A stretch of 64,000 nucleotides of DNA from Chlorokybus atmophyticus (Eukaryota > Plantae > Mesostigma and Chlorokybus algae). Made by a program: the position numbers and the translations under genes. Under the pieces are notes generated by a model that worked only from the letters and a program-made list of their open reading frames with translations, was not told where the DNA came from and searched no databases. Where the stretch lies: NCBI GenBank assembly GCA_009103225.1, contig RHPI01003369.1:503500-567499 (forward strand). The letters are read 5' to 3'. This document shows, piece by piece, positions 1 through 22,400 of this stretch (positions are counted from its first letter, which is position 1; each line of letters begins with the position of its first letter).

Positions 1-126
1 AGCCGTCCATGCTTGTGGCCTTGGTTGCCCCTCTGCTACTTGCAGACCTTACAACCTACTCCACACCAAGCAACTACAGCTACTCACACAATCGTAACAC
101 ACTCCATCAACCTACACAAGCATGTG

Positions 127-139
127 TGGGCCCATAACC
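127..139 (-). promoter_or_regulatory. Primer-binding site GGTTATGGGCCCA (internal/half tRNA-iMet type)
   Basis: Directly abuts the LTR end TCAACA. Matches the PBS sequence recalled for Drosophila copia and Volvox Osser (GGTTATGGGCCCAG). Confidence 0.8.
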
Positions 140-557
140 TGTTGACATACACACGTGCAAGTGACACGCCAACAACATCAACACAAGAGCATGACTGCTA
201 CTGCCATTAATGCCATACAAGTCCAGGGGCTTTATACCCCGCCAGTTTCTACACACATCTACATTTGCAAGCACCGCGTGCACAATACTTGGTCTTTCAG
301 CGCGCTCTAAGTTGCGCTTTTTAGCTCACAATCAGAGCTTTTCAACAAGCTAAGCCACGCCTGCTACGCTTACGTATCCACAAAGCTACGCGGTTTCTCC
401 CAACGCTCTACTCAGCATCTGGTCCGGAGTCCGTCCTGGCTCGACCGTCTTGCTAAGTCCGGAGTCCACGTGCTCAGCCCTTACCTTTTTACTCTCGACT
501 CCTGTGTGGAGGGCAAGCTGACCGGATACAAGTATCACCCGTGTGATACCTTCAACA
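140..557 (-). mobile_element. 5' LTR of a Ty1/copia (hemivirus/Osser-like) element whose body runs off the left edge of the window
   Basis: Minus strand reads TGTTGAAGG...GTCAACA (TG...CA inverted ends), has a TATAAA box (+231-236) and is followed immediately by the PBS GGTTATGGGCCCA. Homologous to the LTRs at 574-998, 5820-6266, 7185-7636 and 9952-10463. Confidence 0.85.
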
Positions 558-573
558 TCGACGGGGGTGAGCG

Positions 574-998
574 TGTTGAAGGACTAGCATGCACATGTAG
601 CTGAGGCAAGCATAGACACACAGAGACAGAGCTACCGCCACCAGAGCATACACAAGTCACATCACATTCATCTATTACAAGTTGTCCGCTGGTTTTTATA
701 CCAACCAATTACACACACGTCTACGTTTGCAAGCACTGCGTAAGCTATACTTAGCCTTTTGACGCGCTCTAAGCTGCGTTGTCTTTCTTACAACTAGAGC
801 TTTCCAGCAAGCTCTTACACGCCTAATATAAGTAGGTATACGCGGAGATACAAAGCATTTAGTAAGGCTCCAGTCTGGAATCCGGAGTCTAGTCCGACGA
901 CGCCATCTTGCTAAGTCCGGACCTAGTGCTCGTCCTTACGACCTTCTACTCCTGTGTGGAGGGTCGATGCTGATCGTATGTAGGAATGACTCTCAACA
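574..998 (-). mobile_element. Solo LTR (copia family) inserted at the RNase H/integrase junction of the gypsy element
   Basis: TGTTGA...TCAACA ends with perfect 5-bp TSD GAGCG (569-573 and 999-1003). Confidence 0.9.
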
Positions 999-1003
999 GA
1001 GCG

Positions 1004-1560
1004 CTGGCATCTCCTCTATTTCTGGCATTGTTGGGGCCGATCCTGTAATGGTGTCTCGTTCCGAACGTAATGCAGCTACGGCAAACATGGTGGCCACCTG
1101 TGGTGGTGGTGCCACTGGACCCAGCTCATGGCGGGCACCGCTGGCGTCGTTGGTGGAGAGGTGGGGGTTACGGCTGAGGCCGTCTGCGTCTTTTTTGACC
1201 AGGCCCGCCCGGTGTGTGATCTCAAAGTCGTATTCCTGTAGCAACAGGGCCCACCTGGCCAACTTGCCCGTAAGGTGCTGGTTGGTTATAAGCCAGCGCA
1301 GCGGTTGGTGGTCTGTGATCAGTGAGAACTGACTTCCGAACAGAAAAGGTCTAAAGAGGAAGATGGCCCATACTGCAGCAAGGCATTTGCCTTCATAACT
1401 GTTGTAGTTGGCCTAAGCGCTGTGGTTGCTGCGACTGGCGTAGGACACCACCCGTTCCCTCTTGTTATCGAGTCGAGATAAACTAATACAGCACTCATGC
1501 CGAGCTTGCTCCAGTCGGTGTGGAGAACAAAGGGCTTGGTGTAGTCTGGCCGCTGTAAAA
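1004..1560 (-). pseudogene. Ty3/gypsy RNase H domain (frameshifted, with stops)
   Basis: Hand translation: PILQRPDYTKPFVLHTDWS...VSYASRS...FSLITDHQPLRWL...KLARWALLLQEYDFEITHRAG...DADGLSR. Confidence 0.9.
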
Positions 1561-1584
1561 TGGGGGCTGATGTGAGCCTTTACT

Positions 1585-2358
1585 TCAGCTTTTCAACAGC
1601 CTATTGCTGGGCCTCCTTCCAGCTCCACTCTGTCTCTTCTTAAGAAGTTCGTTAAGGGGGCGCGCCACCTTGGCAAAGTCTTTACCGAACCTCCTGTGGT
1701 AGTTGGCGAGGCCAAGGAAGGCACGCAGTCGAGTCAGGTCTGTCGGGGCTGGGATAGATGCCAAAGCCTCCACCTTGGCCTGCTGAACGTACACGCCGTT
1801 GGGCACGATCATGTGGCCGAGGTAGGGGACCTTGTGGGTAAAGAAAGTGCACTTGTCGGGGTGCACAGTCATCCCTACTGCCTGAACTCTCCTTATCACC
1901 TCTTCGATGTGGAGGAGATGCTCCTCTGCCGTGTGGCTGAAGATTAGGATGTCGTCGATGTAGCACCGCGCGAAGGAGCATCCCTTAAACGCCTTGTCCA
2001 TCGCGCGCTTGAACTTTGCTGGCGCGTTCTTTAGCCCGAAAGGCATGACCTTCCAGTGGTAGAGCTGCCGGTTGCACCAAAATGCCGTCTTGTGCTTGTC
2101 TCTAGGCTTGATCTCGATCTGGTTGTACTCCTGCCGCATGTCCAGAATACTAAACACGGTGCACGAGCCGACGTCGTCAAAGATGCCCTTTGCGGTTTGC
2201 ATTGGGTACCGGTCCTGCTTGGTTTTGTTGTTGAGTGGGCAATAGTCCCCACGCATACGCCGTTCTGTCCGGTTGCCCTCCGAGTCCTTTTTGAGGGGCA
2301 TGACTGTGGCGGCGGCAAAGTCTGACGTGGACTCCTCGATGAGTCCCGCCTTCAGCAA
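1585..2358 (-). pseudogene. Ty3/gypsy reverse transcriptase
   Basis: ORF contains GLIEESTSDFAAATVMPLKKD, DRYPM, LDMRQEYNQI, MPFGLKNAPAKF, CYIDDILIFS and YLGH. Confidence 0.95.
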
Positions 2359-2749
2359 TGCTTTTCATCACTGCTCCACCAAGTCTTCCACCAACTTGGA
2401 CAGTTTGTACTGTCTTCTAAACATTGGCTCTTCATCGACGAGGTCGACGTCCATCTGGTACACTGAGTACTTGCCCGACGCCTTGACGTTAAAGCTGAAC
2501 TGAGCTCTCCACTTGTTGAGGAGAGCTTTCGACTGCTCCTTCACAGGCCCTGTAGCCAAGGGTCCCATGGCATGATCCCATGATGTGGCTGTTGCCTTCA
2601 CAGGGATATTTTCCACTGTGACTGCTGCCCGCTCCAGGGCGGTGTGGGCCACGACAGTATCGGAGCGATTGACCCACCCCCTAGACAGGTGTTTGAGATT
2701 TTTGAGAAACACCCGTCGGTTTTGGATGGCGAAGCACATTTCCAAGTAA

Positions 2750-3827
2750 CTAGACGCATCTATTTTGGTCCATGGCGCGACCTAGGAGTTGCCTCTGCTG
2801 AGCGTCAGTCAATGAGCAGCCTGTGATGCTCCTTGAGAAGAACCCCATGGCGCGTTTGCGCTCGCATGCGTTGGGTTCGTCCAGTCGGCCCGTGTTGCTG
2901 TCGAAGACCATGCCGTCCCCGCCATATCTGAAGGCATACGAGCCCGGGTATGAGACCAGTGTGGGGAGAGCTCGACGTGGTTCTCTAGGTTGATTGCTCC
3001 GATGGAATTGCGCGTGGTCGTGGCGAGAGACTGGTTGCAACGTTCTGCCAGCGTCGAGGATGTCATTCACCTACAGGTTCCAAGGATGCGAGATAAGGAG
3101 GTGCTCAGCGGCGGTCAGCTCTTCCACAGCGGCGGTTTGTCCATTTGGCACGGACGCGGTGTGTACGTGACCCATGGCGCACGAAGTTCATCTTGGACGG
3201 ATGGCCAAGGATAGAGCACACGACATGGTTGCTGTGCTGCACATGGTGGCGGCGATCATCCTCGGAGTGGACATTCTCGATGACATACGACAGAGGCTGT
3301 TGAATCTGGTGGTGCTGCGGCAGGTGCATAACTGGCAGCAGCTCCCAAATGGGTGTGGAGCGTGGATCGTTTAGCCCCTGTCCGGTGCCGGCCCTAGAGT
3401 GACCCTCGCACTCCCATCCAGCAATCAACAGATTCACATTGCCCAAGGCAATGAGATAATCAGCCGAGATGAGGCGGATGTCTTGCGATAGAGCCTTAAG
3501 ACTTCCACGCAATACAGACAACGGCAGGAGGTGTAGATAGCGCAAGTGCAATCGGCGTAAACAATGGCGAACAGCAGATCGACCATGCGGATCAAGGTCA
3601 CAGTAGTAATAATGTGTTACCTTGACACTGGTGTTGAGAAGAGCCGCCAAGCCGCTGCTGATCCCGCCGAATAGCTCCAGCAAGGTGACTCCTTGTTGGC
3701 GCCGCACCGCGCTGAAGTCCACGACTCCGATGGCCACGGTGAACCATTTCGCAACCGGGACATCTTCGTGGTAGTCTAGAAAGCGTGTAGGGAAAGGCTG
3801 TTTGTCCAGCAACACATGCGCATCCAC
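2750..3827 (-). pseudogene. Retrotransposon-encoded C5 cytosine DNA methyltransferase, DNMT3-like (frameshifted near 3105-3150)
   Basis: Motif I LLELFGGISSG; motif IV LIAGWECEGHS; motif VI YVIENV; motif VIII HRVRAKWTN; motif IX ERKRAMGF; motif X QRQLLGRAM. All lie in canonical order across ORFs 3105..3827 and 2750..3070. Confidence 0.88.
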
Positions 3828-4077
3828 CTCTGCTCTCTAGCGACGCTCTGCAGGGTCTTGCAAGGCCACCTCCTGGGTTGCTGTGTCCTGCGTGTCGGAG
3901 TATGGCATGGGTGACGTAGCGACACTTGTAGCGGTGGCCCCCATGAGTCGGCGTGCTCTTGTGGGCAAGCCCAGGTCGAGCGGGATGAACCCGATGGCGG
4001 AACCATCTTCGCTGCGCCAGCCGGGTTTGAACCATGCTTGCTTGGTCCAGTTGTCCATGCCAATGACTACGGGAAGC

Positions 4078-4345
4078 TGAAGTCCTGCCCGACCAGCAGG
4101 TCATAGCTAGTGACGTTGGTGACCACACACCGCTGAGCCGGTTGAGTGGTGTGAGTGGGGTCAAGCCCAGTCAGGACAATGAGGACTTCCCTGGTGATGC
4201 CAACGGGGCTTTCTGGTCCTCACGTGGCGGTGTCAATTCTAAAAGGGCAACTGTCCAGCGACGCTGCTGTGAGACCTAAGGCCTTAGCCAAGTGTCTGCC
4301 AATGATACATGGTTGTGCCCCTCAATCCAGCATGACGCGCTTGGG
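4078..4345 (-). pseudogene. Retropepsin-type aspartic protease
   Basis: RVMLD*GAQPCIIG: the D-S/T-G motif is broken by TGA at 4322-4324. C-terminal YDLLVGQDF flap motif present. Confidence 0.85.
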
Positions 4346-5819
4346 CGCACGTCCGTTAATCTGCACATGCTTGCCCTGTTTGGCAACCAGGACGGCGTTG
4401 ACGCTGAGCCGTGCGCGATCGTCCGGACGTCGGGAAACAGCATTTGCGGTGGGGTGTTGCTCCAGGGTGCTGAACCTCAAGGCTGCCATGGCTCCTCTTC
4501 CTGCAGCAAGAGCTGTGCCCTGTTTTTGTGCACTCCCTTGTTCTGTTTCACCCCCCTGCCCTGGCCCCTGTCCGGGTGGTGGATTGTGACGAGGAATTGG
4601 GTCAGTACCAGGAGCTGGTGGTGGTGGTGGTGGAGGACCGTGTTCCATTGCTGCCACTGCCTCCCTGTTGGTCCAGTAGAGTGCATGAGCGGCCTCACGC
4701 ACAAGTGTGCCCTCCCATGTGGCTGAGGGGTGATAACGTCAGTCGGCAAACTCCTCCACCCGAGGCATATGCGTGAGGTAGACGGCGCATACCAGCTGCG
4801 TTCTCAATGCGTAGCCAATGGTGGGTATTCCCAAGATGCTCCGCATGTACGTGTCCCACCGGCCTCCAGTAATCCCTACGTCGATCACTTTAATGGCTCG
4901 CCCTCTCAGGGTGTCGGATGAGTCCTGTTGTCGACACTGGTTGTCATAGGCCTGAGCGATGTGCCGAAGTTGCCGTGCTGCCTCGATGCCTGGTAGATGC
5001 ATGAGGGTGACCTCCATGGTGACTCTGTTGCGAATGCCATATTGACGCAACTGGTCCACCACTTGGTCGTAGGCTTGCCGTAAAGAGCGCATGAATGCAC
5101 TCATTCAATGCAGTCTTGATGGAAGCGCGAACAGTGGAACTGCAGGGTGGTGGTTGATCAACCATGTGAGTACTTGAGCCCGTTCTCCCGCGGTTTGCTG
5201 TAGTCGCAGCAACCCTCTGAGTGTGGCGCCTTCCGAGCCTTGTTGTTGCAACGTTCCCTGAATGGCTTCCTGCAGCAGGCGTGTGCGCAACCATTGCTCC
5301 TCGTGTGTTTGTTGACTAGAGAGATTCGGGTGGGCTCTTTGTTGAAGTAACCCTTCTTTGGTTGACGCTGAATTGCTGGTCAGGTGTTGGTCATGTTTAC
5401 AATGAGGGCAGCAATTTCCCCTTGAAATATCTCCTTAACGCCCTCGTTTGAGCGATCCTGATGCGCTCCCGGTCCCCGTCGGTGCAATGCTGCGGCCTGT
5501 TTACCCAAATAATGCCATATGCTTCAGCGCGGGTGTCGTTAATGACGACGCCAGGTGGTGCTTCGTTAATGTCCCGCTGGACATCTGCATGATGGTCCCA
5601 TTCGCGACGGCGAACCACCTGTTCTTGCTGTTTACAAAATTGGCGAGCCCAATCTAGTGAGTAGAAGCGGCGGCATTGCTCACGCCATGAGCATGTGGCC
5701 ATTGCAGGATCGTTGCCCAGCAGACGCGCAGCAAGTGCCCGAAACAGTTGAACCACCTGCGGGTCCTAGTCGAAGTGGTCCAGGTTGGACAGTTCTGGAA
5801 TGGATGGTTCGAGCAATGC

Positions 5820-6266
5820 TGTTGAAGATATTCCTACATCCAGGCGGACGGTCAGCTTGCCCTTTAATTAGGAATGGCCGCGAGAAGGCTCTAGGCGAGG
5901 ACTCAAGTCGAAAGTTCCAAGCGCGTGAAGGTTCCAGGCGCGGACTCAAGTCCAGAGTCTGGCGACTTCCAAGCCTGCACGAGAATCGTTATAACTCGAT
6001 GGTTACTGCACCGATTTGGGCGTTCTAAAGCTTAGTAGATAGCCCTTGAAAGTAGCTACAAGATGCTTCTTAAAACGCGTAATTCAAATAAGTGTAAGTG
6101 AGCAAACGTGGTGGCTTTTAGAGTAGATAGGTGTATTCCTGACGGGTATAAAACCCGCGGACATGATGGCAATAGATGGTCTTAGTTTTATTGTTGCAGC
6201 CTCTTGGCGTTGGTGTTGGGTGGCGTGCACACATGTGCATGTGTAGGTTTGTCAACGCATCTCAAT
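5820..6266 (+). mobile_element. Solo LTR (copia family), opposite orientation to the host gypsy element
   Basis: Starts TGTTGAAGATATTCC, ends ATCTCAAT(A), TATAAA at 6147. Flanking direct repeat AATGC (5815-5819 / 6267-6271). Removing it restores the host frame (HPALL-EPSIP). Confidence 0.9.
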
Positions 6267-6841
6267 AATGCCGGATGCTCCCGAGCCAACCGATTGCGGT
6301 TGTACAAAACCCAGAACATGGTGAGGGTCTCGTCAATGATGCGAAGGGTGCAGAAGTCGTGGCCCAGCTCCTGATGATGGAGAGGGACAATATCCACACC
6401 AGATAGCAGGGCCTCCTCGTCGATGCGCCACGTGAACTGGTCACCTCTAACGTGCGCCGGGGTGATTGGCATGCCAGCGGCTGTACGCGTTGGTCCTTGT
6501 CTAAGTGAAAACAGTGGCAGCCGGTGAAAACGCTGTGGTTGTTGCTGCTGTTGTTGCCGCTTGGTCAGCAACACCAGCTGTTCCACCTGTAGAGGATGGC
6601 CCGGCGGCCCCTCGGGTTCGCTGTAGTGGCTGTACGCGCGAGGCGGGGTGACTTCCTTACGATTCACTCCCAATGCTGCCCAACGTGCCATGTAGCATGC
6701 GCAATATTCATCCTCCCTGCCCTTTAGCATCGCTTGAAGCTCCTCCATCCATGTTGTGAGGGCAGCAACCACCTCTGTGTTTTCTACGACATGCGCCTTG
6801 CGGGCGGCGTTGCCTGCCTTGGGGCCACTGTAGTGGTTCTG

Positions 6842-8660
6842 TTATTGTTTCGGAGGGTTGTTCATCCCCCGATAGCCGTTGTTGGCTGGCTCCTTGCCCT
6901 TATTGCCGTTGTTGTTGTTGTTGTTGTTGTTGTTGTAGCTGCTGCCATCGTAGCTGCTTGAGGGTATCAACTCAGGGTGCTTGGCGTAGCAGGCTGCCTC
7001 CAAGTGTCCGGTCTTGTGGCAGTGGTCACACACCCGGTTCCCGTACTCCTCCATGCAGTTCTTCTGGTAGTGGCCGTGTCGACCACACCGATGGCAAACG
7101 ACGACAGGGGCAGATAGTGCAGCGTGAGCTGACTTCGCAGGAGATTTGGGTGTGCTGGTGGGATAAGACTTGCGGTCACGTCGGTGTTGAGATTCAGACA
7201 CTACTGATCATGCATGGAGTTGGTGGCAAGCACAAGCACACACACTCTACCAGAGCATACACACAAGGCTGATCCAAAAAGGCGTTCTAAGGATTATTAT
7301 AAAGTCACACCGCGGGCTTTTATACCCGCCAGTTCTGCACCTGTCTACTTTACAAGTCACCACGACTTCTACACGCAACCAATTCCTGCGCTCTAAATTG
7401 CACCACCTAGCTATTTTTAAGAGCTTTCCAACAAGCTATAACTCGCGCCATACAATGATGTAACCACCGAGCTACAATTTTTCTACTGCGCCTGGAAGTC
7501 TCCAGACTCCGGACTCGACTCCGCGCCTGGAACCTTATCGACTAAAGTCCTCGCCTGGACCTTTCTCGACTGGCACCTTCTCGCGCATGAATCTTCTCGC
7601 GGCTATTGCTGACCGGATACAAGAATATCCTCAACAGTTGTCTGGGGTCTTGAGCAGAGGCAGGAGCACGTGAGGGACCAGAGTTCATATCCAACACTGC
7701 TCTCATTCACCTGGTAGTTATGGATTGCCTGGGCTGTTTTAAAGGCTTGACGCAGCGAATACCCTTGTGATTGGGTACTGTTAAGAGCGTTGTCCACCGT
7801 CCTGTTCAGTGGAAGCTCTAGTTGGCAAACGAACACCACGGCGGCAACTTCATCGCTGAGGATCTTGTAGTTGGTGTCCTTCGGCAGCTTGATCATACGG
7901 GTGTATTTGCGCAGAGGATCCTCCCCTGCTTTGCGCCTGAAGTGACGCAATTCCTCCACCTTCTGGCTGGTCTGTGGTGGGAATGTGCACCGAAGCGCCA
8001 GATACAAGTTCTGCAAGCTTGAGGGTGACAACGTACGGTCCACCCTAAAGGTGAGGGCGGGCTTTCTCGCATGCTGACCGAGCCTGAAGACAGTGTATTG
8101 CCTGCAGCCGTGTCTCGGGTTCCCTGATTTCTTGTCCGGATTGGAGTATCAGATCCGGCGACGCGTTCGTGCTTGTGATTCCTCAAGCGCAGTTTGTTGC
8201 TCAGCCATTAACCTGAACACCAAAAGTTGCACCAAGGACCGGCATGCTTGTTGCGCTGCCGCCAACTCGCGGTCGACTAATGCGGGATTAACTGCTGGTA
8301 TATCTACTTCACTTGTCAATTGCACTGAGGCGAAAGCTTCTGTAAGGGTAGGGCCTTGCAGTGGGGCAGTTGGATTAATGGGCATGGCAGGGATGTCAGG
8401 ACTTGATGCCTCCATGGGCAGAGCTCTGGTGCCGGCCAGAACTCCATACCCTTAAATCTCATGCTGTGCAGAAACTGACCTATACACCTCATGTGCCTCG
8501 TGGTCTAAGCAAATTGCAGCCATGCGAAAAGACGTTACTCTGACCAGTTGGGAGTCTTGGTCGCGTGGTAGCTCATTCCTAAATCGAACTTGATGATCCA
8601 TTTGTCCAGTGGTGTTGTGCCAGGACATCCGAAAAAGGTGAGACCATGAGTGGAACCGGA
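6842..8660 (-). pseudogene. gag: capsid-like region and two CCHC zinc knuckles, split by a solo LTR
   Basis: LTFFGCPGTTPLDKWIIKFD (about 8580-8640); ELRHFRRKAGEDPLRKYTRM (7603..8043); CHRCGRHGHYQKNC and CDHCHKTGHLEAAC (6842..7201). Confidence 0.85.
7185..7636 (-). mobile_element. Solo LTR (copia family) in gag
   Basis: TGTTGAGGATATTCTTGTATCCGG...TCTCAACA. Imperfect 5-bp TSD GTCGG/GTTGT. Removal gives the continuous frame DPRQ-RDRKS. Confidence 0.82.
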
Positions 8661-9020
8661 TGCCTCCGTGTCGTTGCTGTCGAGCTGATTGATGAAGCTT
8701 CCACTTGATGACGAGACTGAGTATGTCTCGATCGGGTTATTGATGAAGACCGGGGGCTATCGCTGTTGTCGTCGCCCTCTTCTTCAAGAAGCCAGCAGCA
8801 GCTGCGACCACGGCGACATAATTGAAGGAACCAAACAAGACTGGCATAACCAAATTGGGATACAATGCACTGTCAATGCCATGCTAGGGTTCTTTTATCT
8901 TGCACATGCACAGCCTCAAGTATCTTGCACATGACATACACTGTCAATGCCACATGCACACCCTCATGCACAGCCTCTAGTGTCATGCACATGAACAGCA
9001 TGACCAATCTCGCAAATGCA

Positions 9021-9473
9021 CAGCCTATTTCTACTTGCGGGAGCTCACAAGTCGCAAAAGAGAAGCTGCGGAGTACCACGAACGGGTAATCCATGATCTA
9101 GTTTAATGTTTTCAGCGGCAATTAAGCAGTATGCTTGCAGATTGCCATGTTGGTCAGAGTGAACCAAGAGCAGCACGCCAGGCTGACTGTCCGCCTGGCG
9201 GAGTGCAACAAAGCGGAAGACGAGGTAAGCATGTGTATGCTGATGGGCTAGTCCTCTGGCAGCACGCCACTCTTACAGCATTATCAAATGCAGGTGGTCA
9301 CTCTCAAAGCGACCATCAAGCGCATGCGCGTGCACGGCGAGGTGCTGACATTCAAGCTGAAGGACGAAGTAGCCGCTGTATTGTCAACGAGCAAGGCAGA
9401 GGATTACTCCGATGTTGAAGCAGAAGACTTGTCGGAGGAGGAACAGGAGGAGGGGATTGAGGAGGAATTCTGA
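9021..9473 (+). other. Orphan spliced coding fragment (3 exons, acidic C-terminus), origin unknown
   Basis: GT-AG introns 9086-9140 and 9225-9293, both phase 0, join ...YFYLRELTSRKREAAEYHER/IAMLVRVNQEQHARL...AEDE/VVTLKATIKR...EEEQEEGIEEEF*. Confidence 0.45.
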
Positions 9474-9479
9474 GGTAGG

Positions 9480-9951
9480 CACCACGGGTTGACAAGCTGC
9501 GCATGAGTGCGACAGCTGGGTTCAATGTTGTAGGTAGTTTCATGCGCAAGTCGGCTGCTCAGTTGCAAGTGGACATACTCTGACCACTGCCGGTACATTG
9601 TATATGTTGCGGGCTTATAGTTGCAAGACCAAACAATTATGCCTTCGCAAGCTAAGGGCGGATCTGGAGCATCCCATGTATTGCATCACAATGAACTGTG
9701 ACAATTAAGGCGCCATGAAATTGCTGAAGCACCCTAGCGCTTTTTCACGCACGAAGCACATTGACGTCATGCATCATTTTGTGCGAGACAGAGTCACGAG
9801 AAAGGAGGTTACCTTCTCGTATTGCAAGACTGAAGACATGCTCGCGGACTTCATGACGAAGGCACTATCACAAGTGAAGTTTAAGGCATGCTGTGCTGGT
9901 CTTGGCATTTGTGTTTGAGTAGGAGCTTGGGTCAAGCTGCATGCGTGGGAG
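9480..9951 (+). pseudogene. Ty1/copia RNase H C-terminus and polypurine tract (5'-truncated element)
   Basis: LCLRKLRADL...ITMNCDN*GAMKLLKHP...RTKHIDVMHHFVRDRV...CKTEDMLADFMTKAL, then GCGTGGGAG immediately before the LTR. Confidence 0.9.
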
Positions 9952-10463
9952 TATTAAGGAATGACGTCCAGTCAGCTCGACCTCGACAGACAAAGGCATC
10001 GAGTGCTAAGAAATGGTTAAGTGCTTGTGCACGTTGCAGTTGCAGTAAGAGGACTGATATCGAGCAGTTGTGAGTCTAAAGCTCAATATCTGCATAGTCT
10101 AATGAAGGACGCTCGAAGACTCCGGACTTGGAGCTCTGGAACAGTCTGGCGAACAGTCCAGAGCTCCGGTAGAAGTAGTAGAACTTTCTGACTACTTAGT
10201 TGCTAGAGACGTGGCATAGCTTGTTGGAAAGCTCTTGAAGTTAGATACGCGGTGCAACTTAAAGCGTCGGATATAGACTAGAGTAGAAGGAAAAGGACCT
10301 TCTAGAGTACAAGTGTGCAATCTGGTAGAGTATAAAGGCACACGGACTTTGCATGTGTAGGAAGGAATAGTGATTGCTATTGGCTAAAGCCTTGGCGGCT
10401 GGTGTGTTGTGCGTGTCATGCTTAGTCCTGCTGCATGTGTGCACCAGCTTCCGAACAATAACA
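9952..10463 (+). mobile_element. 3' LTR of the copia element; same family as the four LTRs upstream
   Basis: Follows the PPT. Shares GTCAGC(T/A), AGCTTGTTGGAAAGCTC (10218-10234) and TATAAA (10331). The end lies at ...AACA 10457 or 10463. Confidence 0.75.
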
Positions 10464-13133
10464 ATCAATCCAAGGTTTGTACAAGCTGCATGGCATGTTA
10501 ATGTTGGCTTACAGCAAGAATTGCCAACTTTTGTCAAATGGTAAGGGTCACATATTAACAGCAGTGTAACGGCAAAGAAACGGCCGGCTATTGCTGTCAG
10601 CTGTCCATAACTACCGGCTAACGGCCGTCTATGCACATTGACCAAAGAGTAACCGGTTGACAACTCTCAGCCGGTCAGTGCCACTGACAACCACTTTTGG
10701 CCCGCGGCCGTCTGCGTCGATCCACTTAAGCCAATGGCAAACCCAACAGTCCAATTGTAACATTTCAGGCAGCGGCAGGCAGGCTCAGGCATCCGTCAGT
10801 CTCTGAGTCCTTAGTCAGTCACCGTGTAAAATTTGCGACGTTCGCCGTATCGTCCATAAGATAGGTTCAAGCCCAACCAGCTGTCGAGGTCGCTGGTGGT
10901 CTCCTCGGCCACAGGGGAAAGCCCGTAACGATGAGTGGACTCTCTGACTGCTGAAAACTCACTCATGCAAGTCGCACGGTGAGCGGCGGAGAGAGTGAGG
11001 CAAAGTGTGTGCTCTACTGGTGCTCCCCCAATGCTACCACTCAACACACTAGTGCTTGTGAATGCACTATGTGCTGGCAATATTAACACAACACTGATGC
11101 AACCAACGCCGCTGCAAGAATGCAAGCCACGCTGATGCACGACTCTCACTTGTACAAGGAGGATAACACTGTAAGTCAACAAGCCACTACTAGAGGTAGT
11201 GCTGCTTATACAATTCCTTGAATGAGGTCAAGATAATTCCACAGTTAAGTGAGCTGTATGAATGCGGCAACACATGGATGCCACACTCTGATGCGGACTA
11301 CACAACGTGCACTTACGCAACCACAATCGTGTCAAGTGACAAGCAATGCACGTGTACATACATTGCAATCTCTTACGTGTGCATGTGTCTTGGCAACCTG
11401 GCGGCGAGGTGATGCAGTCACATAAAGCCACAACCTTCAGCGAGCAAGTCCCGAGCACTCCGAAGATCAACATCCGTACTTCTTAAATACCAAGTTTCAG
11501 TTCTTACTTACAGTGTCAGCAACGTACAGAGACAAAGTCATAAGCCTTTATAGTCAAGTGACAACTGTTTAGTTTTAAGACAACGGCTAGTTTACAAAAT
11601 GACCTAAATTTAGCCTAGGTCAAACTCGCAACGGATCAGCTAGTACGGCTTATATTAGGTACATACGAAGACTGCTTGACAACTGCTCAGTGTCGCGCGG
11701 GACTCATGCCGGTAGCCGAGGTCGATGTCTAGCTGTAGGCATGGCTCGAAAGGGTTACTGATGCTGGTAGCACGGGAGCGATGTCTGGCTGTGAGCATCA
11801 ATGAGGAAGTTGGCCCCTCCTGGACCGCTGGCGTAACAACTACCCTATTGGAGTCAAACAAGATTGGATAAAGCTAGATTCTATATCCGTTTACTGGTCT
11901 GTTATTAAGCTATTGTATCTGGTTGCACTTGTCAGTGTTCGTCGCAAAGTCTGGCGATGCTAGTCAATTTGTTTTGGTTACCTAGTCTATCTGTCGCGGT
12001 TTTAATTTGCATGCAAGCAAGCATGAGACCCACGTGCGGTAGCGTGATGCTAGGATATCTGATGTGAATAGCCTTATCATGTAACCCAGATTATGTCATT
12101 CTGCAGCACACTTGGGCCGAATGACGTAATTGGGTATATTAATATACGTAACTCGTGTTTGGGGTTTCACGTTTGAAACCACTCAATTGACTTGTAAACA
12201 CACAAGTGCCGCCGCCATTGCTTGGTATATATTTGGCAGTTGGAGCTTGCGGCGGCGCCGGCGTAGGCGGCGGCGGCGGTGGCCAAGACGGCGGCCGCCG
12301 TCCTCACTGACCAGGCCTCCCTCCACGTCACCGCCTACACCAGGTTGATGGCCACGGCAACCACGGCGGCGGCGGCGGAGCTAACCTCTACAGCAGCTGT
12401 CGCTGACAGTTCGCCCTGGTAAGAGCGGCCTGCTGCTCAGCGAACGCAATGCTTGCGTTCAGTGTGCGATGTGCTCACAGTGTGCATTGTCCTGTTGCAC
12501 CTTGTGTATGGTGCAAAGATGTGTGAGTGCAAGCGCGTGTATGTGTTGCATGCCATCTGCAGTGCTAATGCGCATCTGCCATTTGTGCGTAAGTGTGTGC
12601 GTGCTGTGTATGCATGCGATGTTCTGCCATGCGTGCGATGTGCGTGTCTAGTGTGGGTAGCATATAAGATAGTTTGGATACTCTGCCATGTTTGGAATTA
12701 ATCTATCAAGTTTGTTGCATATTTCAATGTGGGATTAGCTACACTTAGTGTGCAGCTAGTCTCGTGCCTACTCTACATCTGGTTCTCTATGGCTGATCAG
12801 TACTCTAGCCTATCTGACTTTGATTTGTTGCATATCTGAATGTGCGACTAGCTACATCTACTGTGCAGCTAGTCTCTTATCTGGTCTGCATCTAACTCTT
12901 TATGGCTGGTACTCAAGCCTTATCTAGCTATTACCTAATTACATGTCTAGACCGCCCTTGTAGCTAGGTCATGGCCAGAGTTAGACTAGGGTGAACCCTA
13001 GTCCCAAAACTAGCTATATCTGATCTTCGTACCTACCCCACACCTATAGTAATATCCTCTAGAGCTAGTCTACTCCAGCAAACTAGACCCCAGCTACGTG
13101 AGGATGAGGTAGCCGTTTTGCGTAGCGCAAGTA

Positions 13134-13834
13134 CTAGCATATAGCCTGCCCAAACCGATTGGTGAACTTGGGATCACGGTTGGACACCAACTCTTGAGGC
13201 ACGCCGTGTAGTTCAAACACTATGTTCACAAAAGCGTACGCATACTCTTGCGCGCTAATCTCTGTGCAATACTGTGCAAACCGGACCATCTTAATCAATC
13301 GGTTAACAAAGATAATGATGGCATCGTGCCCTTGCTTTGTCTCCGGTAGATCTGTAATGAAATCCATAGTCACACACTCTCCCATTGATAACTTGGGATA
13401 GTTAGCGGCTTTAACGAGCCTGCTGGCTTACGGTGTAACGCCTTGTCACATTGACAAGTGTCACAGCACTGGACATACTTGATCGCATCTGCCACCAAGG
13501 TTGGCCACCAATATTGTCGCTGCAGCAGCTGGATGGTCTTAGTCATGCCCATGTGACCAATGTATACTGCATTGTGTGCCTCATGCAGACACTCTTGCTT
13601 TAGGCCGAGTGCATCTGGCATAATAAGCTTGCCTTCGGAGTACCATAACCCCTTATGACAGGTGACCTTGTCATCCGCTGGCCTCAACAACTCAATAAGG
13701 CAGTTGTTAAGTGCATAGGCTTGCGTCAGAAGTTCAATAATGTCCTTTGCATCAACAGCCAGTGGGTCCTTTCCACTTGCATTAAGAACTGCTATTGGTG
13801 TATCATTGCTAGCCGCTTCACATGCAATTGGCAA
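13134..13834 (-). pseudogene. Ty3/gypsy integrase fragment (HHCC zinc finger and start of catalytic core)
   Basis: EAHNAVYIGHMGMTKT...YWWPTL...CDTCQ...PAGSLKPLTIP..WE / TMDFITDLPET..GHDAIIIFV...HGVPQELVSNRDPKFT. Confidence 0.92.
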
Positions 13835-14249
13835 ATCGCAAGTTGCATGCTCAGTTCAAGGCTAAGGCTTACAAAATGCCTCTTGTGTCATATTCACAGC
13901 TTTCTTGAGCTCAACTGGCAATTTGCGAGTGCTGACATTATACTACGTACTACTTGTCTGTGCCGAAGTTGCACGATACAAAATACGGATACGATCAGTC
14001 ATGTACATTACTTTATTGAATTTTTACACATTTCGCATAACATACAATATGAATACGATTTCAACACACAAAACAATATGTATGTGCAAAGTGAGCCAAT
14101 GAGAGATTGCAGCTGACAATGCAATTAACGGCAATGCATGCAACCAATGACAAGGCTCAACCCCTCACAACCCCGGGACTGCATCACTATCACTATCACT
14201 ATCTGAACATAAACTTCTCCTCATAATCAATGCCTTTCACTCTATCCAT

Positions 14250-15420
14250 CCATTGAAGGTTGCTGTGGATGTACATCAAGTCTTCTGCACGCGGAGGTGT
14301 GAGGCGGTTCCGCTTCTTGCTGTTCGTCAACTATAGACCAGTTGCGCTCGCAAGCGAACGCGCTGCACACCTGCAACAGCACACGCACTGCAACGGTTTG
14401 TAGCTATGGCAAGCCTCCACCAAACTGCAGCCACCAGCGGTGTGCAGGCATTGTGGCTGCAGCCTCCTGCACGCACTTGCACGCAAACATGCCGTCATGA
14501 GCTCGGTAAGCAGCATGTTGCTTGACAGCTTTGAGCTGGTAGCGAACCTCCGCGGCCAGGTGGAAGCTATCAAGCATGCCCTCCACCATGTTGTGGAAGC
14601 CTCTCATAACCTCCTCATTGTCGTAATGCTTGTGGCTGCGAAACTCTGGGTCTAGCACAACCTGCTGCATGAAGGTCCGTGTGAAGCAATGCCCACCGCT
14701 TCTCCCATAGCAGCAGGACCTGCCTCTCCTTGCTGTGCTCAAGTTTCATACTGCGCAATGCGCAAATGCTCTTCCACCTCAAACATACCAATGTAGAGTT
14801 TACCAGCAGCCGGTTGGTTGCCGTCACGGTCCACAAGGCGCAACAACTTCATGACGGGTTCACTGAGCCCTACTATGAGCTTAACGCCTTGCCAGAAGTG
14901 AGAGCTGAGCAGGTTGGAGCGCACCTCATCAGCCTCGTTGGTGTACCTACTGCTTTCCGCCCAATCTTTCCACTCATAATCAACCACAACCTCTTGAAGC
15001 GCGTCCTTCACCTGCCAGCACAATCCACGCACTTGTTAGGGCAGTCTTGATGCATGCAAGACTGATTGGCAAGAAGACAACCACGTTGTCAACTTGCACC
15101 ACTTCGGCACATTATAACTTACGCTCAGCAGGCGCTCAAGCATGATGAAGTTGGTATCAAAGCAAGTATCTCAGGGCTTGAGTAACTTGCAATTAGCTTG
15201 GCTCTCGAACATTGCTGCGATGATGGTTGGTGATGAATTTGATAATGTGCTTGGCCTCGAGGATGGGAGAGCTCACCCAGTCCGGTTTACCAATGTCTTC
15301 CAGCAATAGAGATAAGCAATGTGCAGGACATGGAGACCACACAATGGCTGATTGGTCTTCCATGATCATGTCTCCTGCTACCTTACACACGGCGGCACTG
15401 TCAGTGCACACCTATACCAC
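14250..15420 (-). mobile_element. hAT-superfamily transposase remnant (DUF659-like region to dimerisation domain)
   Basis: TDSAAVC...WSPCPAHCLSLLLEDIGK; LLRLVD; LDPEF; WWLQFG; CERNWS; KKRNRL...EDLMYIHSNL. Confidence 0.88.
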
Positions 15421-15550
15421 GTGCTCTATGCCAACCTGCAGACGATAACTTTGACTCAATGCATTCTAGCAATGTCGTGCTGTAAACGCCAAAAAAGCAT
15501 CATATTTTCAATCGCATTTGGTTCGTATTTTTAAAGTTTTATTATAAATA

Positions 15551-16130
15551 TTATAAAATACTTGTATTTGTAGGGGCAAGGTGAGCGTATGATGCAACTA
15601 TGGATTGTGCCCACCCTTGGCTTCGTGCACGTGCATGTGTTGTCAATGCCAATAACAAAGGCGAGCGGCTCAAGGGGTCTGCTACGTTTACCCTATCTGA
15701 TCTGTATACCCAAGTAAAGTTGAAACGAGACAAGTACTCAGTCCATCTTGCTTGTCTTTATGACAAGGTTGGGTCTGAAAGCAAACAAGGAGGTCGTGGT
15801 CCGTAACCATTGTAAATCCACCTTCGACCCCCTCGAGATAGCAGCGCTACTCTTGTAGCGCATAGAGTACCCCAAACAACTCTTGCTCTGTTGTAGTATG
15901 GTTTCTCTCGGCTAGAGAGAACTTCTTGCTAAGACAAGCAAGTGGGCCCATTCTGGATCAACACAGCGCCAGTGCCAACTATGGATGCATCCGAGATTAC
16001 CTCCCAAGGTGTGGTGAAATCCGGCAGCTGTAACACCGATGCCGTTACGAACGCCTCTTTGATAAACTTAAAGGGGTCCTCCTGCCTTTGTGCCCACCGC
16101 CACTTGACTTTGTCACACAAAAGTTCGTGA
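15551..16130 (-). pseudogene. Ty3/gypsy RT-RNase H linker and RNase H fragment
   Basis: VLQLPDFTTPWEVISDASIVGTGAVLIQ; ERNHTTTEQELFGV; VTDH; SRFNFTWVYR...NVADPLSR. Confidence 0.88.
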
Positions 16131-16590
16131 GGGGAGCAACCCGTGATAAGTATGCAAGGATGTATGTACAGAAATAGTTGCTCAACTCAAAAGAATGCAC
16201 GCAACTCATGCACATTTCAAAAAGCTAGCTATCACAACCACCATCTCAGTGTAATGTAAACCACTCAGTGCTAGTCAGTGCATTAATGCAATAGCCTCGT
16301 AGCCCCGACTAATAGGTCATTCGCACAAAGGGAAGCATGTGGCATGACCTCATGGAGTCCACATTCCCAAGCAGGGATCGCAAGGATCACTCCGAACAGG
16401 GCAGGTCACCCATTGACCGCAATACCATCATCACCACAGTGAGAAACATCAGATGGAAGGGGCTTGCTAAGAGAGGCTCATCTAATGCATGAGCATGCAG
16501 CATGTTCTGTAGGATGCAGCCACGCATGCTCAGAACTGCAAGGCTATCGTGCATGCACACATGCCATGCACATCCTCAACATGCAAGAGG

Positions 16591-19451: not shown

Positions 19452-22400
19452 TCACATGCCTTGAATGGCCTGTTCCAGCTCTGCAATCTTGCGGATGAGC
19501 AAGTTGCGGTCGGCTTTGATTGCGGATATCTGCTTTGCATGCACCTCCTCCCGAGCACTGACCTGCTCCAACAGCTGCTTCATCTGCGAGTAAGTGTAAA
19601 CCTCTTAATTAGGACACATTCTGGCAGCAGGTTGTTCAAACACATCAAGCACATGCGCAGTTTGACGTCATGAATACATGCACAGCTGTGCTTGTGACCA
19701 TAGAATGGCCACCTTTGTGTGCACCAATTCAGCACCAAGCTACAAGCCATGGCCGTTACCTCTTCTAGGTCATCATCGTCACCATGGAGGCTGAGCTTCT
19801 CCGCTATGCTCATTTTGATCTTTTCAACGCTGAAGCGGAAGTTATTCCAAGACATTATCCTGGTCACCTTGTCAAAGCGGCTCTCCTCCTCGGGTTTCTC
19901 CTGTGGTATGGATAAAATGCTTGAGTCTGCATCCTGGCGACCAGGACCAACAAACAAGTGCTGAAACTTGTCATGAGACAACAGTCATCTTACCGTGGTT
20001 GCCAGCAAAGTGTTATAGCCTTGATGTGAGCTGCGCACCACACGGAACTTGGTTCAGACAAAAGGCTAGAAAACGAGTCTGACACAAATTACATAAACGC
20101 ACGATGTGCAACCTGCACTGCACTCGACCGACAGATTGTCAACTTGCACCTGGACTGGATAGTGATGATAAAATGCAGCAGCCCACTCTTGACATTCAGC
20201 AGTGGCACCCAGAAATCCACAGGAGCTCCAGGTGCAATGCTATCAAGTGGGATCTCACACACCCCAAGAGAGTCATCCCTGCAGAATCACCATGAATTGA
20301 GCCTCTTGCACAGGGTTTGCTCACAGCAATGCAGGCAATTTTCACCTGCCAATGTCGTCGTGATCTTTACAGTGAACACGAAGGGAGCTTCCGTCTTCCC
20401 TGAAAGTGATGGTCTCATTCCACACTGGATTCAATGTCTTTGAGCAAATTTTTGTTTTCTTCTTCAACTGCAAGCAGCAGACAGTAGGCTGGATACGTAG
20501 GAGCTGCTGGCCACAAGACATAGAATGAAATTAAGTAAACCGTACCTTGCCGTAGGTAAGCGTGCAGTAGGGGTCAGATGTGTTGCCCCTGTCCATGGCA
20601 ATCAGGTTCTTTCCTTCAATAACTTGAACCTCAACAAGACGAGGCCCTGTTGCAGAATATGAATGTCCGCTACATGCAACTGCGTTGCAAGTGCTCCTTA
20701 CAGCCCAGCTTGCCTCATTGAGAAGCATGCAACTTACCAACGGGGACGGACTCCTGCCGTACCGGGGGTTTTGTCCCTGGTGAGAGCGACAAAGACGACC
20801 TGCCAGAGTTGAACTGTGAGGCATGGCAGATAGTTTCCTGTTCAAAGGTCCAGGAACACTGCAAGTACAGCCAACACGTGTTTAATGTGACGTAGCATAC
20901 CCTTTCATCACGAGTTGAACGTGAATGGATCCTGACTCCACGCCTGTCAGCGGCAGCCACACATCTTTCACTTCACCATCTTGCAGGTTGGCGAGACCCA
21001 TCTCTCCCTAACATTAAACGCTCAGATGCTGGCCAAAGGCAAAACCAAGAAGAAGCCGTATAACACTTACCTCGCCCATGGCTTCATCTCCAAGCCTGTC
21101 TTGATCCATGCACTTGAAGGAAAGCGTCCCTCCACCTCCCATCTCCGCAAACTCAAAGCGCTCGTTCCACTTTGGATTAAGCGTCTTGCTGATGACCTTT
21201 GTGGTACGGCGCTCCTTGCCATATTTAATCTTCAGATAGGGATCCGACTTGCCATTGGTATCACGCGCTACAAGATCTTTGCCCTCGAGGACTATCACAG
21301 AAAGTAACCTGCCAGTGAAAGCCGACCTCGGCGACAACAAGTCGTTGACGCTCATAGGCCGCGTGTCCCCAACACCCGCCCGGTAGACCCACTGAGTCAG
21401 CTTGAAACTCATGTGGATCTGCGGCACGTGAGGTGTGGCAGTTGTCAGTACATGCAGGTGGCAGGACGTGCACTCCACAATCTGTATACCACTATACGTG
21501 TTGTCACTTACCTCGCCGGAACCGCTTTCCAAAGGTAGTGTAACATCGAACTCCTGACCGGGTGTGCAACGCTTGACAACAGATGCTCCGTCCTTATCGC
21601 TGGTCCAGTAGCAAGTGCTGTCGTCATCCATGTACTTGCACTGTAACGCAAACATTTATGCACTGGTCAACATGCAGACCATGAACCTCATGAGCCAGTA
21701 CACAACCTTATCGCACTCTAAGCCAATGCTTTATCAGCACCACCAGGCTGCAGGTAGCATGTGCGGGAAGGCTCACCCAAACATCGCATGTTCCAAGCAG
21801 CTCAATGCGTCCAGAAGCATCTCTGCCGGATACGCGGACATTGACCAGGCCATCATCATCTTTCAGTTCAAAGCCAAACGTCTCGTTCCATGCGGCTTGA
21901 CTGTTTGGTCTCATCTGGTCAGCATGTACTGTCAATTGATAAAGTCACACACCCAAGACATACACTGCAACAATCAACGTTCACTTACCGTTGTTTTCCT
22001 CGTGACGCCATAGCAGGTCATCTCCGCAAACACCTCACTTCCCGGCAGGTGAGGTGCCAGGCCAGTTGCATCCTGCACAGAAGAGTATGCACGTTTGTGC
22101 AGCTGTCTGCAGTATGCTCAAACTCCTGGGGACTTACCTTCACAATCATGTCGAGGGACCCTCCAATGGCTTGCTTGCCCAGGTCCACTAGTTCCAGCCC
22201 GATGCACTTGCGCTTTGGCTCCACCATTTTGCTGGCAATTGTGTCCGCAAGCAGTCGCTCCTGCAACACAATGCTTGAACTAAGGACATCAACCACACAG
22301 CAGACACCAACCGTTGCTTACCATCCATGTTGCAACACCGGGCAAGTCGCTTACAGAGATCTTGGCAATGCCAACTTTTAGGCTAATGGTAGGACGTTCA

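What the first reader, a model, noticed from the sequence alone, without database searches (positions are those of the whole stretch)
2750..3827. DNMT3-like cytosine methyltransferase embedded in a Ty3/gypsy pol between protease and reverse transcriptase
Seen: C5-MTase motifs I, IV, VI, VIII, IX and X in canonical order. The N-terminal part is in frame with the post-protease linker (3837..4058, one TAG), and the RT linker follows. Motif VIII (HRVRAKWTN) and motif X (QRQLLGRAM) resemble DNMT3 (HRARYFWGN; RQRLLGRSW). Established, from memory: DNMT-carrying retrotransposons were reported in Symbiodinium and the charophyte Klebsormidium, so the concept is not new, but it is rare. Inference: the enzyme would be released from Pol by the protease and could methylate the element's cDNA inside the particle or alter host methylation. 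This may be a new lineage or host. This copy is a pseudogene.
Basis: partly seen in the sequence, partly recalled or inferred. Interest (0 to 1): 0.9.

Follow-up and report, generated by a model that had tools for sequence, protein, structure and literature searches.

The report
Dead copy of Gypsy-DNMT3 retrotransposon
This is a broken, truncated copy of a jumping gene that carries its own DNMT3-type DNA methyltransferase between protease and reverse transcriptase. The same kind of element was described in the alga Klebsormidium in 2018, so this is a further member, not a new kind.

Summary
On the minus strand, 3713-2759 encodes a C5 cytosine methyltransferase domain with motifs I, IV, VI, VIII, IX and X in canonical order. 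It is split by one frame change at about 3105-3073. Against a profile of 30 intact relatives the two pieces score E 3e-65 and 9e-37.

It lies collinearly between an aspartic protease (4453-4055) and RT/RNase H (2664-1041) of a Ty3/Gypsy Pol. The family profile matches DNMT3A/3B best (E 2e-24, versus DRM 1e-14 and M.HhaI 1e-9). A confident model of a relative matches only DNMT3 structures in its top 50.

The kind is already known. In Klebsormidium nitens scaffold DF238327, the species of the published KnitGypsy-Dnmt3, I found the same order: zinc knuckle, protease, DNMT, then RT-RH-IN. The window falls in the same clade in both the DNMT and RT-RH trees.

This copy is dead: five frame changes, at least nine in-frame stops, lost invariant residues, and no integrase.

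The scan already noted this family several times in this genome, which earlier notes call Chlorokybus (not verified here). Self-methylation of the element's cDNA remains an inference; the Klebsormidium domain showed no activity in yeast.

Side result: a second, larger branch carries the DNMT between RNase H and integrase.

The parts
7729..7950 (-). gag capsid-like part
   Evidence: tblastn of class A polyprotein N-termini (P0166 residues 221-293), E 0.002, collinear with the rest. Weak.
6953..7180 (-). gag CCHC zinc knuckle(s)
   Evidence: Pfam zf-CCHC 19 bits, below the cut-off of 20.8. tblastn P0197 E 1e-7 and P0166 residues 386-412.
4454..6952 (-). unexplained stretch between zinc knuckle and protease, about 1.8 kb longer than in relatives; holds an inverted copy of repeat R (5928-6160)
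   Evidence: No Pfam or family match. Repeat R.
4055..4453 (-). aspartic protease, broken: in-frame stops at 4324, 4222 and 4069; the TGA at 4324-4322 sits right after the catalytic Asp (VMLD*GAQ)
   Evidence: tblastn P0160, P0005, P0166 and others, up to E 8e-24; stops.
3714..4073 (-). post-protease linker, in another frame than the protease; TAG at 3839-3837
   Evidence: tblastn P0166 residues 777-800 and P0169 residues 782-837, frame -3; stop.
3108..3713 (-). DNMT3-type methyltransferase, N-part (motifs I, IV, VI, VIII)
   Evidence: 210 bits, E 3e-65 against the A1 profile, positions 11-207. phmmer against 1.84 billion representatives: 745 hits.
3071..3107 (-). break in the DNMT: frame change and a stop at 3073; about 21 profile positions lost
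2753..3070 (-). DNMT3-type methyltransferase, C-part (motifs IX, X)
   Evidence: 117 bits, E 9e-37 against the A1 profile, positions 229-332.
1630..2664 (-). pre-RT linker and reverse transcriptase; two adjacent stops at 2370 and 2367
   Evidence: Pfam RVT_1 E 8e-29. tblastn P0176 residues 1306-1656, 45% identity. Stops.
1041..1630 (-). RNase H in two frames with three stops; homology ends at 1041, so integrase and PHD finger are missing
   Evidence: tblastn P0176 residues 1657-1848; stops.

Best explanation
Window 1041-7950 (minus strand) is a degenerate, 3'-truncated copy of a Gypsy-DNMT3 LTR-type retrotransposon. Intact relatives have the layout gag(CCHC)-protease-DNMT3-RT-RNase H-integrase(-PHD), and the elements I found in Klebsormidium nitens (the species of the published KnitGypsy-Dnmt3) and in Closterium share it.

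Shown here:
- the domain identity, its DNMT3 affinity and its place in Pol;
- membership of the same clade as the K. nitens element;
- the decay of this copy, which cannot encode any working protein.

Shown for the family: the methyltransferase is a stably inherited Pol domain. It keeps the catalytic Cys, ENV, RxR and the motif IX/X residues at only 30-45% overall identity. It is better conserved than the protease.

Inferred, not shown: in active elements the domain is made as part of Gag-Pol. It either stays in Pol or is cut out by the protease. It then puts 5-methylcytosine de novo on the element's own reverse-transcribed DNA or on the new insertion. That could, for example, make the copy resemble methylated host DNA or damp its own expression.

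My odds are about 0.95 for the identity. They are about 0.6 that the domain is an active C5-MTase in intact copies, and about 0.3 that the element's own cDNA is the main target.
For: - Profile matches of both pieces: E 3e-65 and 9e-37.
- 745 homologues, many of them 1,500-3,400-aa polyproteins.
- Collinear tblastn with intact polyproteins P0160, P0176 and P0173 from protease to RNase H.
- The A1 profile hits DNMT3A at 2.4e-24 and DNMT3B at 1.6e-22. DRM follows at 1e-14, M.HhaI at 1.6e-9 and DNMT2 at 1e-6. No DNMT1 or CMT hit appears at E <= 0.01.
- The AlphaFold model of relative P0016:955-1295 has pLDDT 94.9. Its top 50 Foldseek PDB hits are all DNMT3A/B/C, E about 1e-18, target TM 0.82-0.85.
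- K. nitens P0265 has zf-CCHC at 297, protease at 598-691 and DNMT at 833-1141, with RT-RH-IN in the next gene on DF238327.1.
- The careful DNMT tree puts the window in the clade with K. nitens and Closterium, 98/96 support.
- The RT-RH tree shows the same split, SH-aLRT 100; the window is 64% identical to P0175.
- Across seven divergent polyproteins the DNMT averages 45% pairwise identity, against 39% for the protease and 56% for RT.
- Published background: Ka/Ks below 0.2 for K. nitens DNMT domains (PMC5890265).
Against: - The window piece alone is below Pfam's cut-off: 19.4 against 22 bits.
- Invariant family residues are lost in this copy. LDAA has become MNFV, an invariant Ala in the motif VIII region is now Thr, and the near-invariant Gln of motif IV is Glu.
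- No integrase, PHD finger or terminal repeats are present, so the element's ends cannot be defined.
- About 1.8 kb between zinc knuckle and protease has no match in relatives.
- On the mechanism, the K. nitens domain gave no detectable methylation in yeast, which the authors call inconclusive (PMC5890265).
- CpG observed/expected in the element (0.79) does not differ from the window average (0.73), so the sequence shows no special methylation footprint.
Confidence: 0.9

Rival explanations
1. In active elements the DNMT3-like domain no longer methylates DNA. It would serve as a DNA- or chromatin-binding or oligomerisation module, a DNMT3L-like role. It might work with the C-terminal PHD finger to guide integration.
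For: The K. nitens domain gave no detectable methylation in yeast (PMC5890265). Most relatives also carry a PHD finger after the integrase, which fits a targeting role. Motif IV in this clade reads ECQ or ECE instead of the usual PCQ.
Against: Across 30 sequences at 30-45% identity, the catalytic Cys, ENV, the two Arg of motif VIII and the motif IX/X residues are invariant or nearly so. A purely structural role does not predict that. Human DNMT3B was also silent in the same yeast assay, so that negative result is uninformative.
Confidence: 0.2
2. The methyltransferase is a fragment of a host DNMT3 gene that lies next to, or was interrupted by, an unrelated Gypsy element. In that case the protease-DNMT-RT order is an accident of nesting.
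For: The copy is heavily broken and each domain sits in a different frame. The stretch upstream of the protease holds unexplained DNA and dispersed repeats.
Against: The same order, with similar linkers, occurs as one uninterrupted ORF in many intact polyproteins, such as P0016 and P0176. The window aligns collinearly with them. The DNMT and RT-RH parts of the window both fall in the same clade. There is no sign of introns or of PWWP or ADD domains.
Confidence: 0.02
3. The motif series is a chance resemblance in a non-coding or otherwise coding stretch.
For: Pfam PF00145 is below threshold for the window's piece. phmmer against PDB with the single piece gave only M.HaeIII at E 0.32.
Against: E 1e-33 to database proteins, and E 3e-65 and 9e-37 to the family profile.
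Confidence: 0.01

Closest known systems
KnitGypsy-Dnmt3 of Klebsormidium nitens (de Mendoza et al. 2018, Nat Commun 9:1341, PMC5890265)
   Same: Ty3/Gypsy-type Pol with an unrearranged DNMT3-type domain. I found the same order in a K. nitens scaffold: zinc knuckle, protease, DNMT, then RT-RNase H-integrase. The window falls in the same clade in the DNMT tree (98/96) and the RT-RH tree (100).
   Different: The host differs; earlier notes of this scan call it Chlorokybus, which I did not verify. Identity to the K. nitens protein is only 32-43% in the DNMT. This copy is dead and lacks integrase, PHD finger and the DIRS-like A..B-A-B repeats, so that hallmark cannot be checked here.
Mammalian DNMT3A/DNMT3B catalytic domain
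   Same: It is the best profile match (E 2e-24) and the best fold match for a relative. The motif order is the same. Motif VIII (AHRxRxxWxN) and motif X (RxxLLGRxx) are similar, and the stretch between motifs VIII and IX is short.
   Different: There are no PWWP or ADD domains. Motif IV reads WECQ/WECE instead of SPCN. The domain is part of a retrotransposon polyprotein. Only about 20% identity.
SymbioDIRS-Dnmt3 and SymbioLINE-Dnmt of Symbiodinium (same 2018 paper)
   Same: Retrotransposons that carry a cytosine methyltransferase. SymbioDIRS-Dnmt3 domains methylate CG de novo in yeast.
   Different: They are different retrotransposon classes: DIRS with tyrosine recombinase, and LINE. The paper regards them as independent acquisitions.
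RT-RH-DNMT3-IN-PHD Gypsy elements ('class B' in this report; e.g. Monoraphidium neglectum MNEG_11595, P0205)
   Same: A related DNMT3-type domain, RT, RNase H, DDE integrase and a C-terminal PHD finger.
   Different: The DNMT sits between RNase H and integrase, not between protease and RT. One well-supported branch separates this group from the window's group in both trees.

Membership tests
C5 cytosine DNA methyltransferase (Pfam PF00145) | Motifs I (FxGxG), IV (catalytic Cys), VI (ENV), VIII (RxR), IX and X, in this order | tested here: met
   All six are present in order in the two pieces when aligned to the A1 profile. The Gln of motif IV is Glu in this copy.
C5 cytosine DNA methyltransferase (Pfam PF00145) | Score at or above Pfam's gathering cut-off (22 bits) | tested here: not met
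   The window's N-piece reaches 19.4 bits. However, 27 of 30 intact relatives pass, best E 8e-16. The shortfall reflects decay and a split domain.
C5 cytosine DNA methyltransferase (Pfam PF00145) | An intact reading frame able to give an enzyme | tested here: not met
   There is a frame change and a stop inside the domain at 3105-3073, a TAG just upstream at 3839-3837, and invariant residues are lost.
DNMT3 clade of eukaryotic DNMTs | Closer in sequence to DNMT3A/B than to DRM, DNMT1, CMT, DNMT2 or bacterial enzymes | tested here: met
   A1 profile against PDB: DNMT3A 2.4e-24, DNMT3B 1.6e-22, DRM 1e-14, M.HhaI 1.6e-9, DNMT2 1e-6, and no DNMT1 or CMT hit.
DNMT3 clade of eukaryotic DNMTs | DNMT3-like fold with a short target-recognition region and an unpermuted motif order | tested here: met
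   The model of relative P0016:955-1295 (pLDDT 94.9) has DNMT3A/B/C as all of its top 50 PDB matches. This was tested on a relative, not on the broken window copy.
DNMT3 clade of eukaryotic DNMTs | Placement inside DNMT3 in a rooted tree with all eukaryotic DNMT families | not tested
The 2018 paper reports this placement for the K. nitens elements.
Gypsy-DNMT3 retrotransposons (KnitGypsy-Dnmt3 type) | DNMT domain inside Pol between protease and RT of a Ty3/Gypsy element | tested here: met
   The window is collinear with P0160, P0176 and P0173. K. nitens shows the same order.
Gypsy-DNMT3 retrotransposons (KnitGypsy-Dnmt3 type) | Same clade as the K. nitens element for both DNMT and RT-RNase H | tested here: met
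   DNMT tree 98/96; RT-RH tree SH-aLRT 100. The window's position inside the clade is unresolved.
Gypsy-DNMT3 retrotransposons (KnitGypsy-Dnmt3 type) | DDE integrase (with a C-terminal PHD finger in many members) | tested here: not met
   Homology ends at window 1041, and there is no integrase or PHD finger downstream. I read this as truncation of this copy, not as a different design.
Gypsy-DNMT3 retrotransposons (KnitGypsy-Dnmt3 type) | DIRS-like repeat layout A-coding-B-A-B | tested here: inconclusive
   No long direct repeats flank the element. The 3' end where B-A-B would lie is missing. The layout is stated in the legend of Fig. 4 of PMC5890265.
Gypsy-DNMT3 retrotransposons (KnitGypsy-Dnmt3 type) | Methyltransferase activity of the encoded domain | not testable with these tools
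   The K. nitens domain gave no detectable methylation in yeast, which the authors call inconclusive.

The most novel reading that the evidence does not exclude
Gypsy-DNMT3 elements would be an old, two-branched lineage of the green plants and algae, not a Klebsormidium oddity.

- One branch holds this window, Klebsormidium, Closterium and many metagenome contigs. It carries DNMT3 between protease and RT.
- A larger branch, which includes the chlorophyte Monoraphidium, carries it between RNase H and integrase.
- The DNMT and RT-RH trees agree on this split.

The domain would then have been captured once and moved once within Pol, or captured twice from similar sources. Either way it was kept through a very long co-divergence with RT, which would argue for a strong, lasting benefit of self-encoded methylation. 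I found no paper in the library that describes the second layout.
Probability: 0.45. Interest if true: 0.5.

Novelty: new member of a known kind. Interest (0 to 1): 0.22.

Why it matters
Retrotransposons that carry the very enzyme hosts use to silence them are a notable case in the conflict between genomes and their parasites, but they have been known since 2018. This copy adds one more host of an early-branching streptophyte type. Together with the Closterium, Monoraphidium and metagenome relatives found here, it shows that the family is widespread and old. The copy itself is dead and can teach nothing about activity. The open question is whether Gypsy-encoded DNMT3 is catalytically active and what it methylates. 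That needs intact copies and bench work.

Tried and rejected
- The search for related loci in genome contigs found nothing, because that collection holds only bacteria and archaea.
- phmmer of the single window piece against PDB gave only M.HaeIII at E 0.32. The family profile was needed.
- Searches for long direct or inverted repeats that could be LTRs or A/B repeats of this copy found none. They turned up only a dispersed repeat of about 230-280 bp.
- Rfam and tRNA scans of 1-12000 found nothing.
- The stretch 4454-6952 matched no Pfam family and no relative.
- CpG depletion is no different from the rest of the window.
- Host identity: the sequencing-run search gave coded names only, and an exact look-up of a host ORF found nothing. 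'Chlorokybus' therefore rests on earlier notes of this scan.
- Contigs of run X1 laid on 1100-7000 include three exact short pieces and many at 90-95% identity, deepest over the RT. None covers the break at 3070-3266, so the frame change could not be confirmed independently.
- The search for close relatives of 132-420 aa found only two distant fragments and no intact copy from this genome.
- The ESM Atlas look-up gave no taxa.
- The careful 93-row DNMT tree did not finish in time. I used the quick tree and a careful 38-row tree. In one search I mislabelled P0270 as class A. It has no flanking domains and groups with class B, so the apparent second change of label there is my error.
- No host DNMT outgroup was available, so the A/B split is unrooted.

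Full report
**1. What is there**

The element lies on the minus strand.

On its own the N-half is a weak Pfam hit: PF00145 at 19.4 bits against a cut-off of 22. It is also only a marginal PDB hit, M.HaeIII at E 0.32.

An exhaustive phmmer search of 1.84 billion representative proteins tells a different story. It found 745 homologues at E <= 1e-3, 339 at E <= 1e-10, and a top hit of 1e-33. Many are polyproteins of 1,500-3,400 residues.

I aligned 30 intact domains (A1) and built a profile from them.
- Piece 3836-3108 scores 210 bits, E 3e-65, over profile positions 11-207.
- Piece 3070-2753 scores 117 bits, E 9e-37, over positions 229-332.
- About 21 positions are missing at the frame change between about 3105 and 3073, where there is also a stop at 3073.

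Motifs I, IV, VI, VIII, IX and X are all present in canonical order.

**2. Context**

tblastn of intact relatives onto the window is collinear.

| Part | Window coordinates | Notes |
|---|---|---|
| gag capsid-like | 7950-7729 | weak match |
| CCHC knuckle | 7180-6953 | |
| protease | 4453-4055 | |
| linker | 4073-3714 | |
| DNMT | 3713-2753 | |
| pre-RT linker and RT | 2664-1630 | Pfam RVT_1 E 8e-29, |
| RNase H | 1630-1041 | homology stops at 1041 |

Homology stops at 1041, which corresponds to residue 1848 of the 2,358-residue P0176. Integrase and PHD finger are therefore absent.

From protease to RNase H the reading frame changes five times. There are at least nine in-frame stops, at 4324, 4222, 4069, 3839, 3073, 2370, 2367, 1603, 1582 and 1415. 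One of them is a TGA directly after the catalytic Asp of the protease.

Within the DNMT, family-invariant residues are replaced. LDAA has become MNFV, an invariant Ala next to motif VIII is Thr, and the Gln of motif IV is Glu. This copy is a dead, 3'-truncated relic.

Two features of the surroundings remain unexplained.
- The zinc knuckle and the protease lie about 2.6 kb apart, against about 0.8 kb in relatives. The extra DNA matches nothing.
- That stretch holds a copy of a dispersed repeat R of about 230-280 bp.

No LTR-like or A/B repeats of this copy could be found.

**3. What kind of methyltransferase**

The A1 profile was searched against all PDB sequences.

| PDB family | E-value |
|---|---|
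| DNMT3A | 2.4e-24 |
| DNMT3B | 1.6e-22 |
| DNMT3C | 7e-22 |
| plant DRM | 1e-14 to 1e-11 |
| M.HhaI | 1.6e-9 |
| DNMT2 | about 1e-6 |
| DNMT1 / CMT | none at E <= 0.01 |

The alignment shows the DNMT3A strings AHRARYFWGN and RQRLLGRSW opposite the family's AHRLRxYWTN and RxxLGRAMD.

An AlphaFold model of an intact relative (P0016:955-1295, with A1 as its alignment) is confident, at pLDDT 94.9 and pTM 0.93. Its 50 best Foldseek matches in the PDB are all DNMT3A, 3B or 3C catalytic domains, with E about 1e-18 and target TM 0.82-0.85.

27 of the 30 aligned domains pass Pfam PF00145.

I could not root a tree with host DNMT families, because no such sequences were available by reference.

**4. Comparison with what is known**

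De Mendoza et al. 2018 (PMC5890265) described KnitGypsy-Dnmt3 in Klebsormidium nitens.
- It is an unrearranged Dnmt3-type domain in the Pol ORF of a Gypsy element.
- It has DIRS-like A..B-A-B repeats.
- Ka/Ks is below 0.2.

The text does not give the domain order, so I looked it up.
- The K. nitens protein KFL_013780020 (P0265) turned up.
- Pfam places zf-CCHC at 297, an aspartic protease at 598-691 and the DNMT at 833-1141.
- On scaffold DF238327.1 the next gene encodes RT, RNase H and integrase.

That is the window's order.

In a careful maximum-likelihood tree of DNMT domains, the window sits inside a clade with 98/96 support. That clade also holds K. nitens, several Closterium strains and metagenome polyproteins. 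The window's position inside the clade is unresolved, and its branch is long (0.92), as expected for a decayed copy.

A quick RT-RNase H tree gives the same clade with SH-aLRT 100. The window's closest relative there is P0175, at 64% identity.

A 2026 preprint still refers to this family simply as 'streptophytes (Gypsy-DNMT3)' (10.64898/2026.05.21.726589). I found no paper on it in Chlorokybus.

The finding is thus a new member, in an additional host, of a kind known since 2018. This scan had already noted the family repeatedly in this genome. One copy lies about 32 kb before this window, and earlier follow-ups reached the same verdict. Those notes name the genome as Chlorokybus. I could not verify that. 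Host-type exons in the window (C2, DUF4336, WD40) are compatible with a green-lineage genome.

**5. How it most likely works**

Shown for the family:
- The DNMT is a stably inherited Pol domain.
- Across sequences that are only 30-45% identical, the catalytic Cys, ENV, the Arg pair of motif VIII and the motif IX/X residues are invariant or nearly so.
- Among seven divergent polyproteins of the window's branch, mean pairwise identity is 45% for the DNMT. It is 39% for the protease, 56% for RT, 63% for RNase H and 55% for integrase.

Inferred: the domain is translated within Gag-Pol. It then methylates the element's reverse-transcribed DNA or the new insertion de novo. This is the idea already put forward in 2018.

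Evidence against the inference is thin but real. The K. nitens domain produced no detectable methylation in yeast. DNMT3B was also silent in that assay, so the authors call the result inconclusive.

The element's CpG observed/expected ratio (0.79) does not stand out from the window's (0.73).

The main rival for the family's function is a non-catalytic, targeting role together with the PHD finger. I give that about 0.2.

**6. Side result**

The homologues fall into two Pol layouts.
- Class A is gag-PR-DNMT-RT-RH-IN(-PHD). It holds the window, K. nitens and Closterium.
- Class B is RT-RH-DNMT-IN-PHD. It holds most database hits, including Monoraphidium neglectum MNEG_11595.

Both trees separate the two layouts by a single well-supported branch. 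Each layout therefore arose once, and the DNMT has co-diverged with RT. Without an outgroup I cannot tell one capture plus a relocation from two captures. I did not find the second layout described in the papers I could search.

Two further observations:
- An intact class A element occurs as a perfect head-to-tail concatemer of an 8,261-bp unit, 2.2 units long, on a metagenome contig (L002).
- A 240-residue PF00145 fragment from the liverwort Calypogeia fissa is 44% identical to the window's domain.

**7. Reads**

Contigs of the one public run that holds part of the stretch include three exact short pieces. Most of the rest are 90-95% identical and lie deepest over the RT and over repeat R. 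This fits a multi-copy family in the same or a close organism. None of the contigs covers the DNMT break.

**8. Verdict**

- The copy is dead.
- The kind is known.
- Interest is low to moderate. It comes mainly from the breadth and the two-layout structure of the family, not from this locus.

Noticed in passing
database proteins, e.g. P0003, P0013, P0205 (Monoraphidium neglectum MNEG_11595): A second, more numerous Pol layout of DNMT3-carrying Gypsy elements: RT-RNase H-DNMT-integrase-PHD. One strongly supported branch separates it from the window's PR-DNMT-RT layout in both the DNMT and RT-RH trees. I did not find it described in the papers searched.
   Followed up: partly
L002:1-18272 (ENA ERZ25067493, contig ctg159469_5x_c): An intact gag-PR-DNMT-RT-RH-IN-PHD element is present as a perfect head-to-tail concatemer of an 8,261-bp unit (2.2 units, 100% identical). 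It could be a tandem array, circular or concatemeric DNA, or an assembly artefact. This bears on the A..B-A-B repeat layout of the family.
   Followed up: partly
window 231-513, 695-963, 7310-7536 (direct); 5928-6160, 10216-10266 (inverted): A dispersed repeat of about 230-280 bp, roughly 70% alike between copies. Two tandem copies lie just past the truncation point, and two lie inside the gag-to-protease region in opposite orientations. Contig depth in run X1 is high at 5828-6024. There is no Rfam or tRNA match.
   Followed up: partly
window 4454-6952, minus strand: About 1.8 kb more DNA between the gag zinc knuckle and the protease than in relatives. It holds ORFs of 119-194 aa that match no Pfam family and no relative. 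It may be a nested insertion or a lineage-specific region.
   Followed up: partly
window 13253-16216, minus strand: Remnant of a second, different Gypsy element (RNase H and integrase only; 27-35% identical to the DNMT-carrying family). No DNMT.
   Followed up: no
P0276 (Calypogeia fissa, liverwort): A 240-residue annotated protein with PF00145, 44% identical to the window's DNMT over about half its length. This hints that relics of this family also occur in land plants.
   Followed up: no
window 21014-21655 (-), 27626-28390 (-), 60094-61456 (+): Host-type exons: a C2 domain, DUF4336 and WD40 repeats. The rest of the window is ordinary eukaryotic gene space.
   Followed up: no
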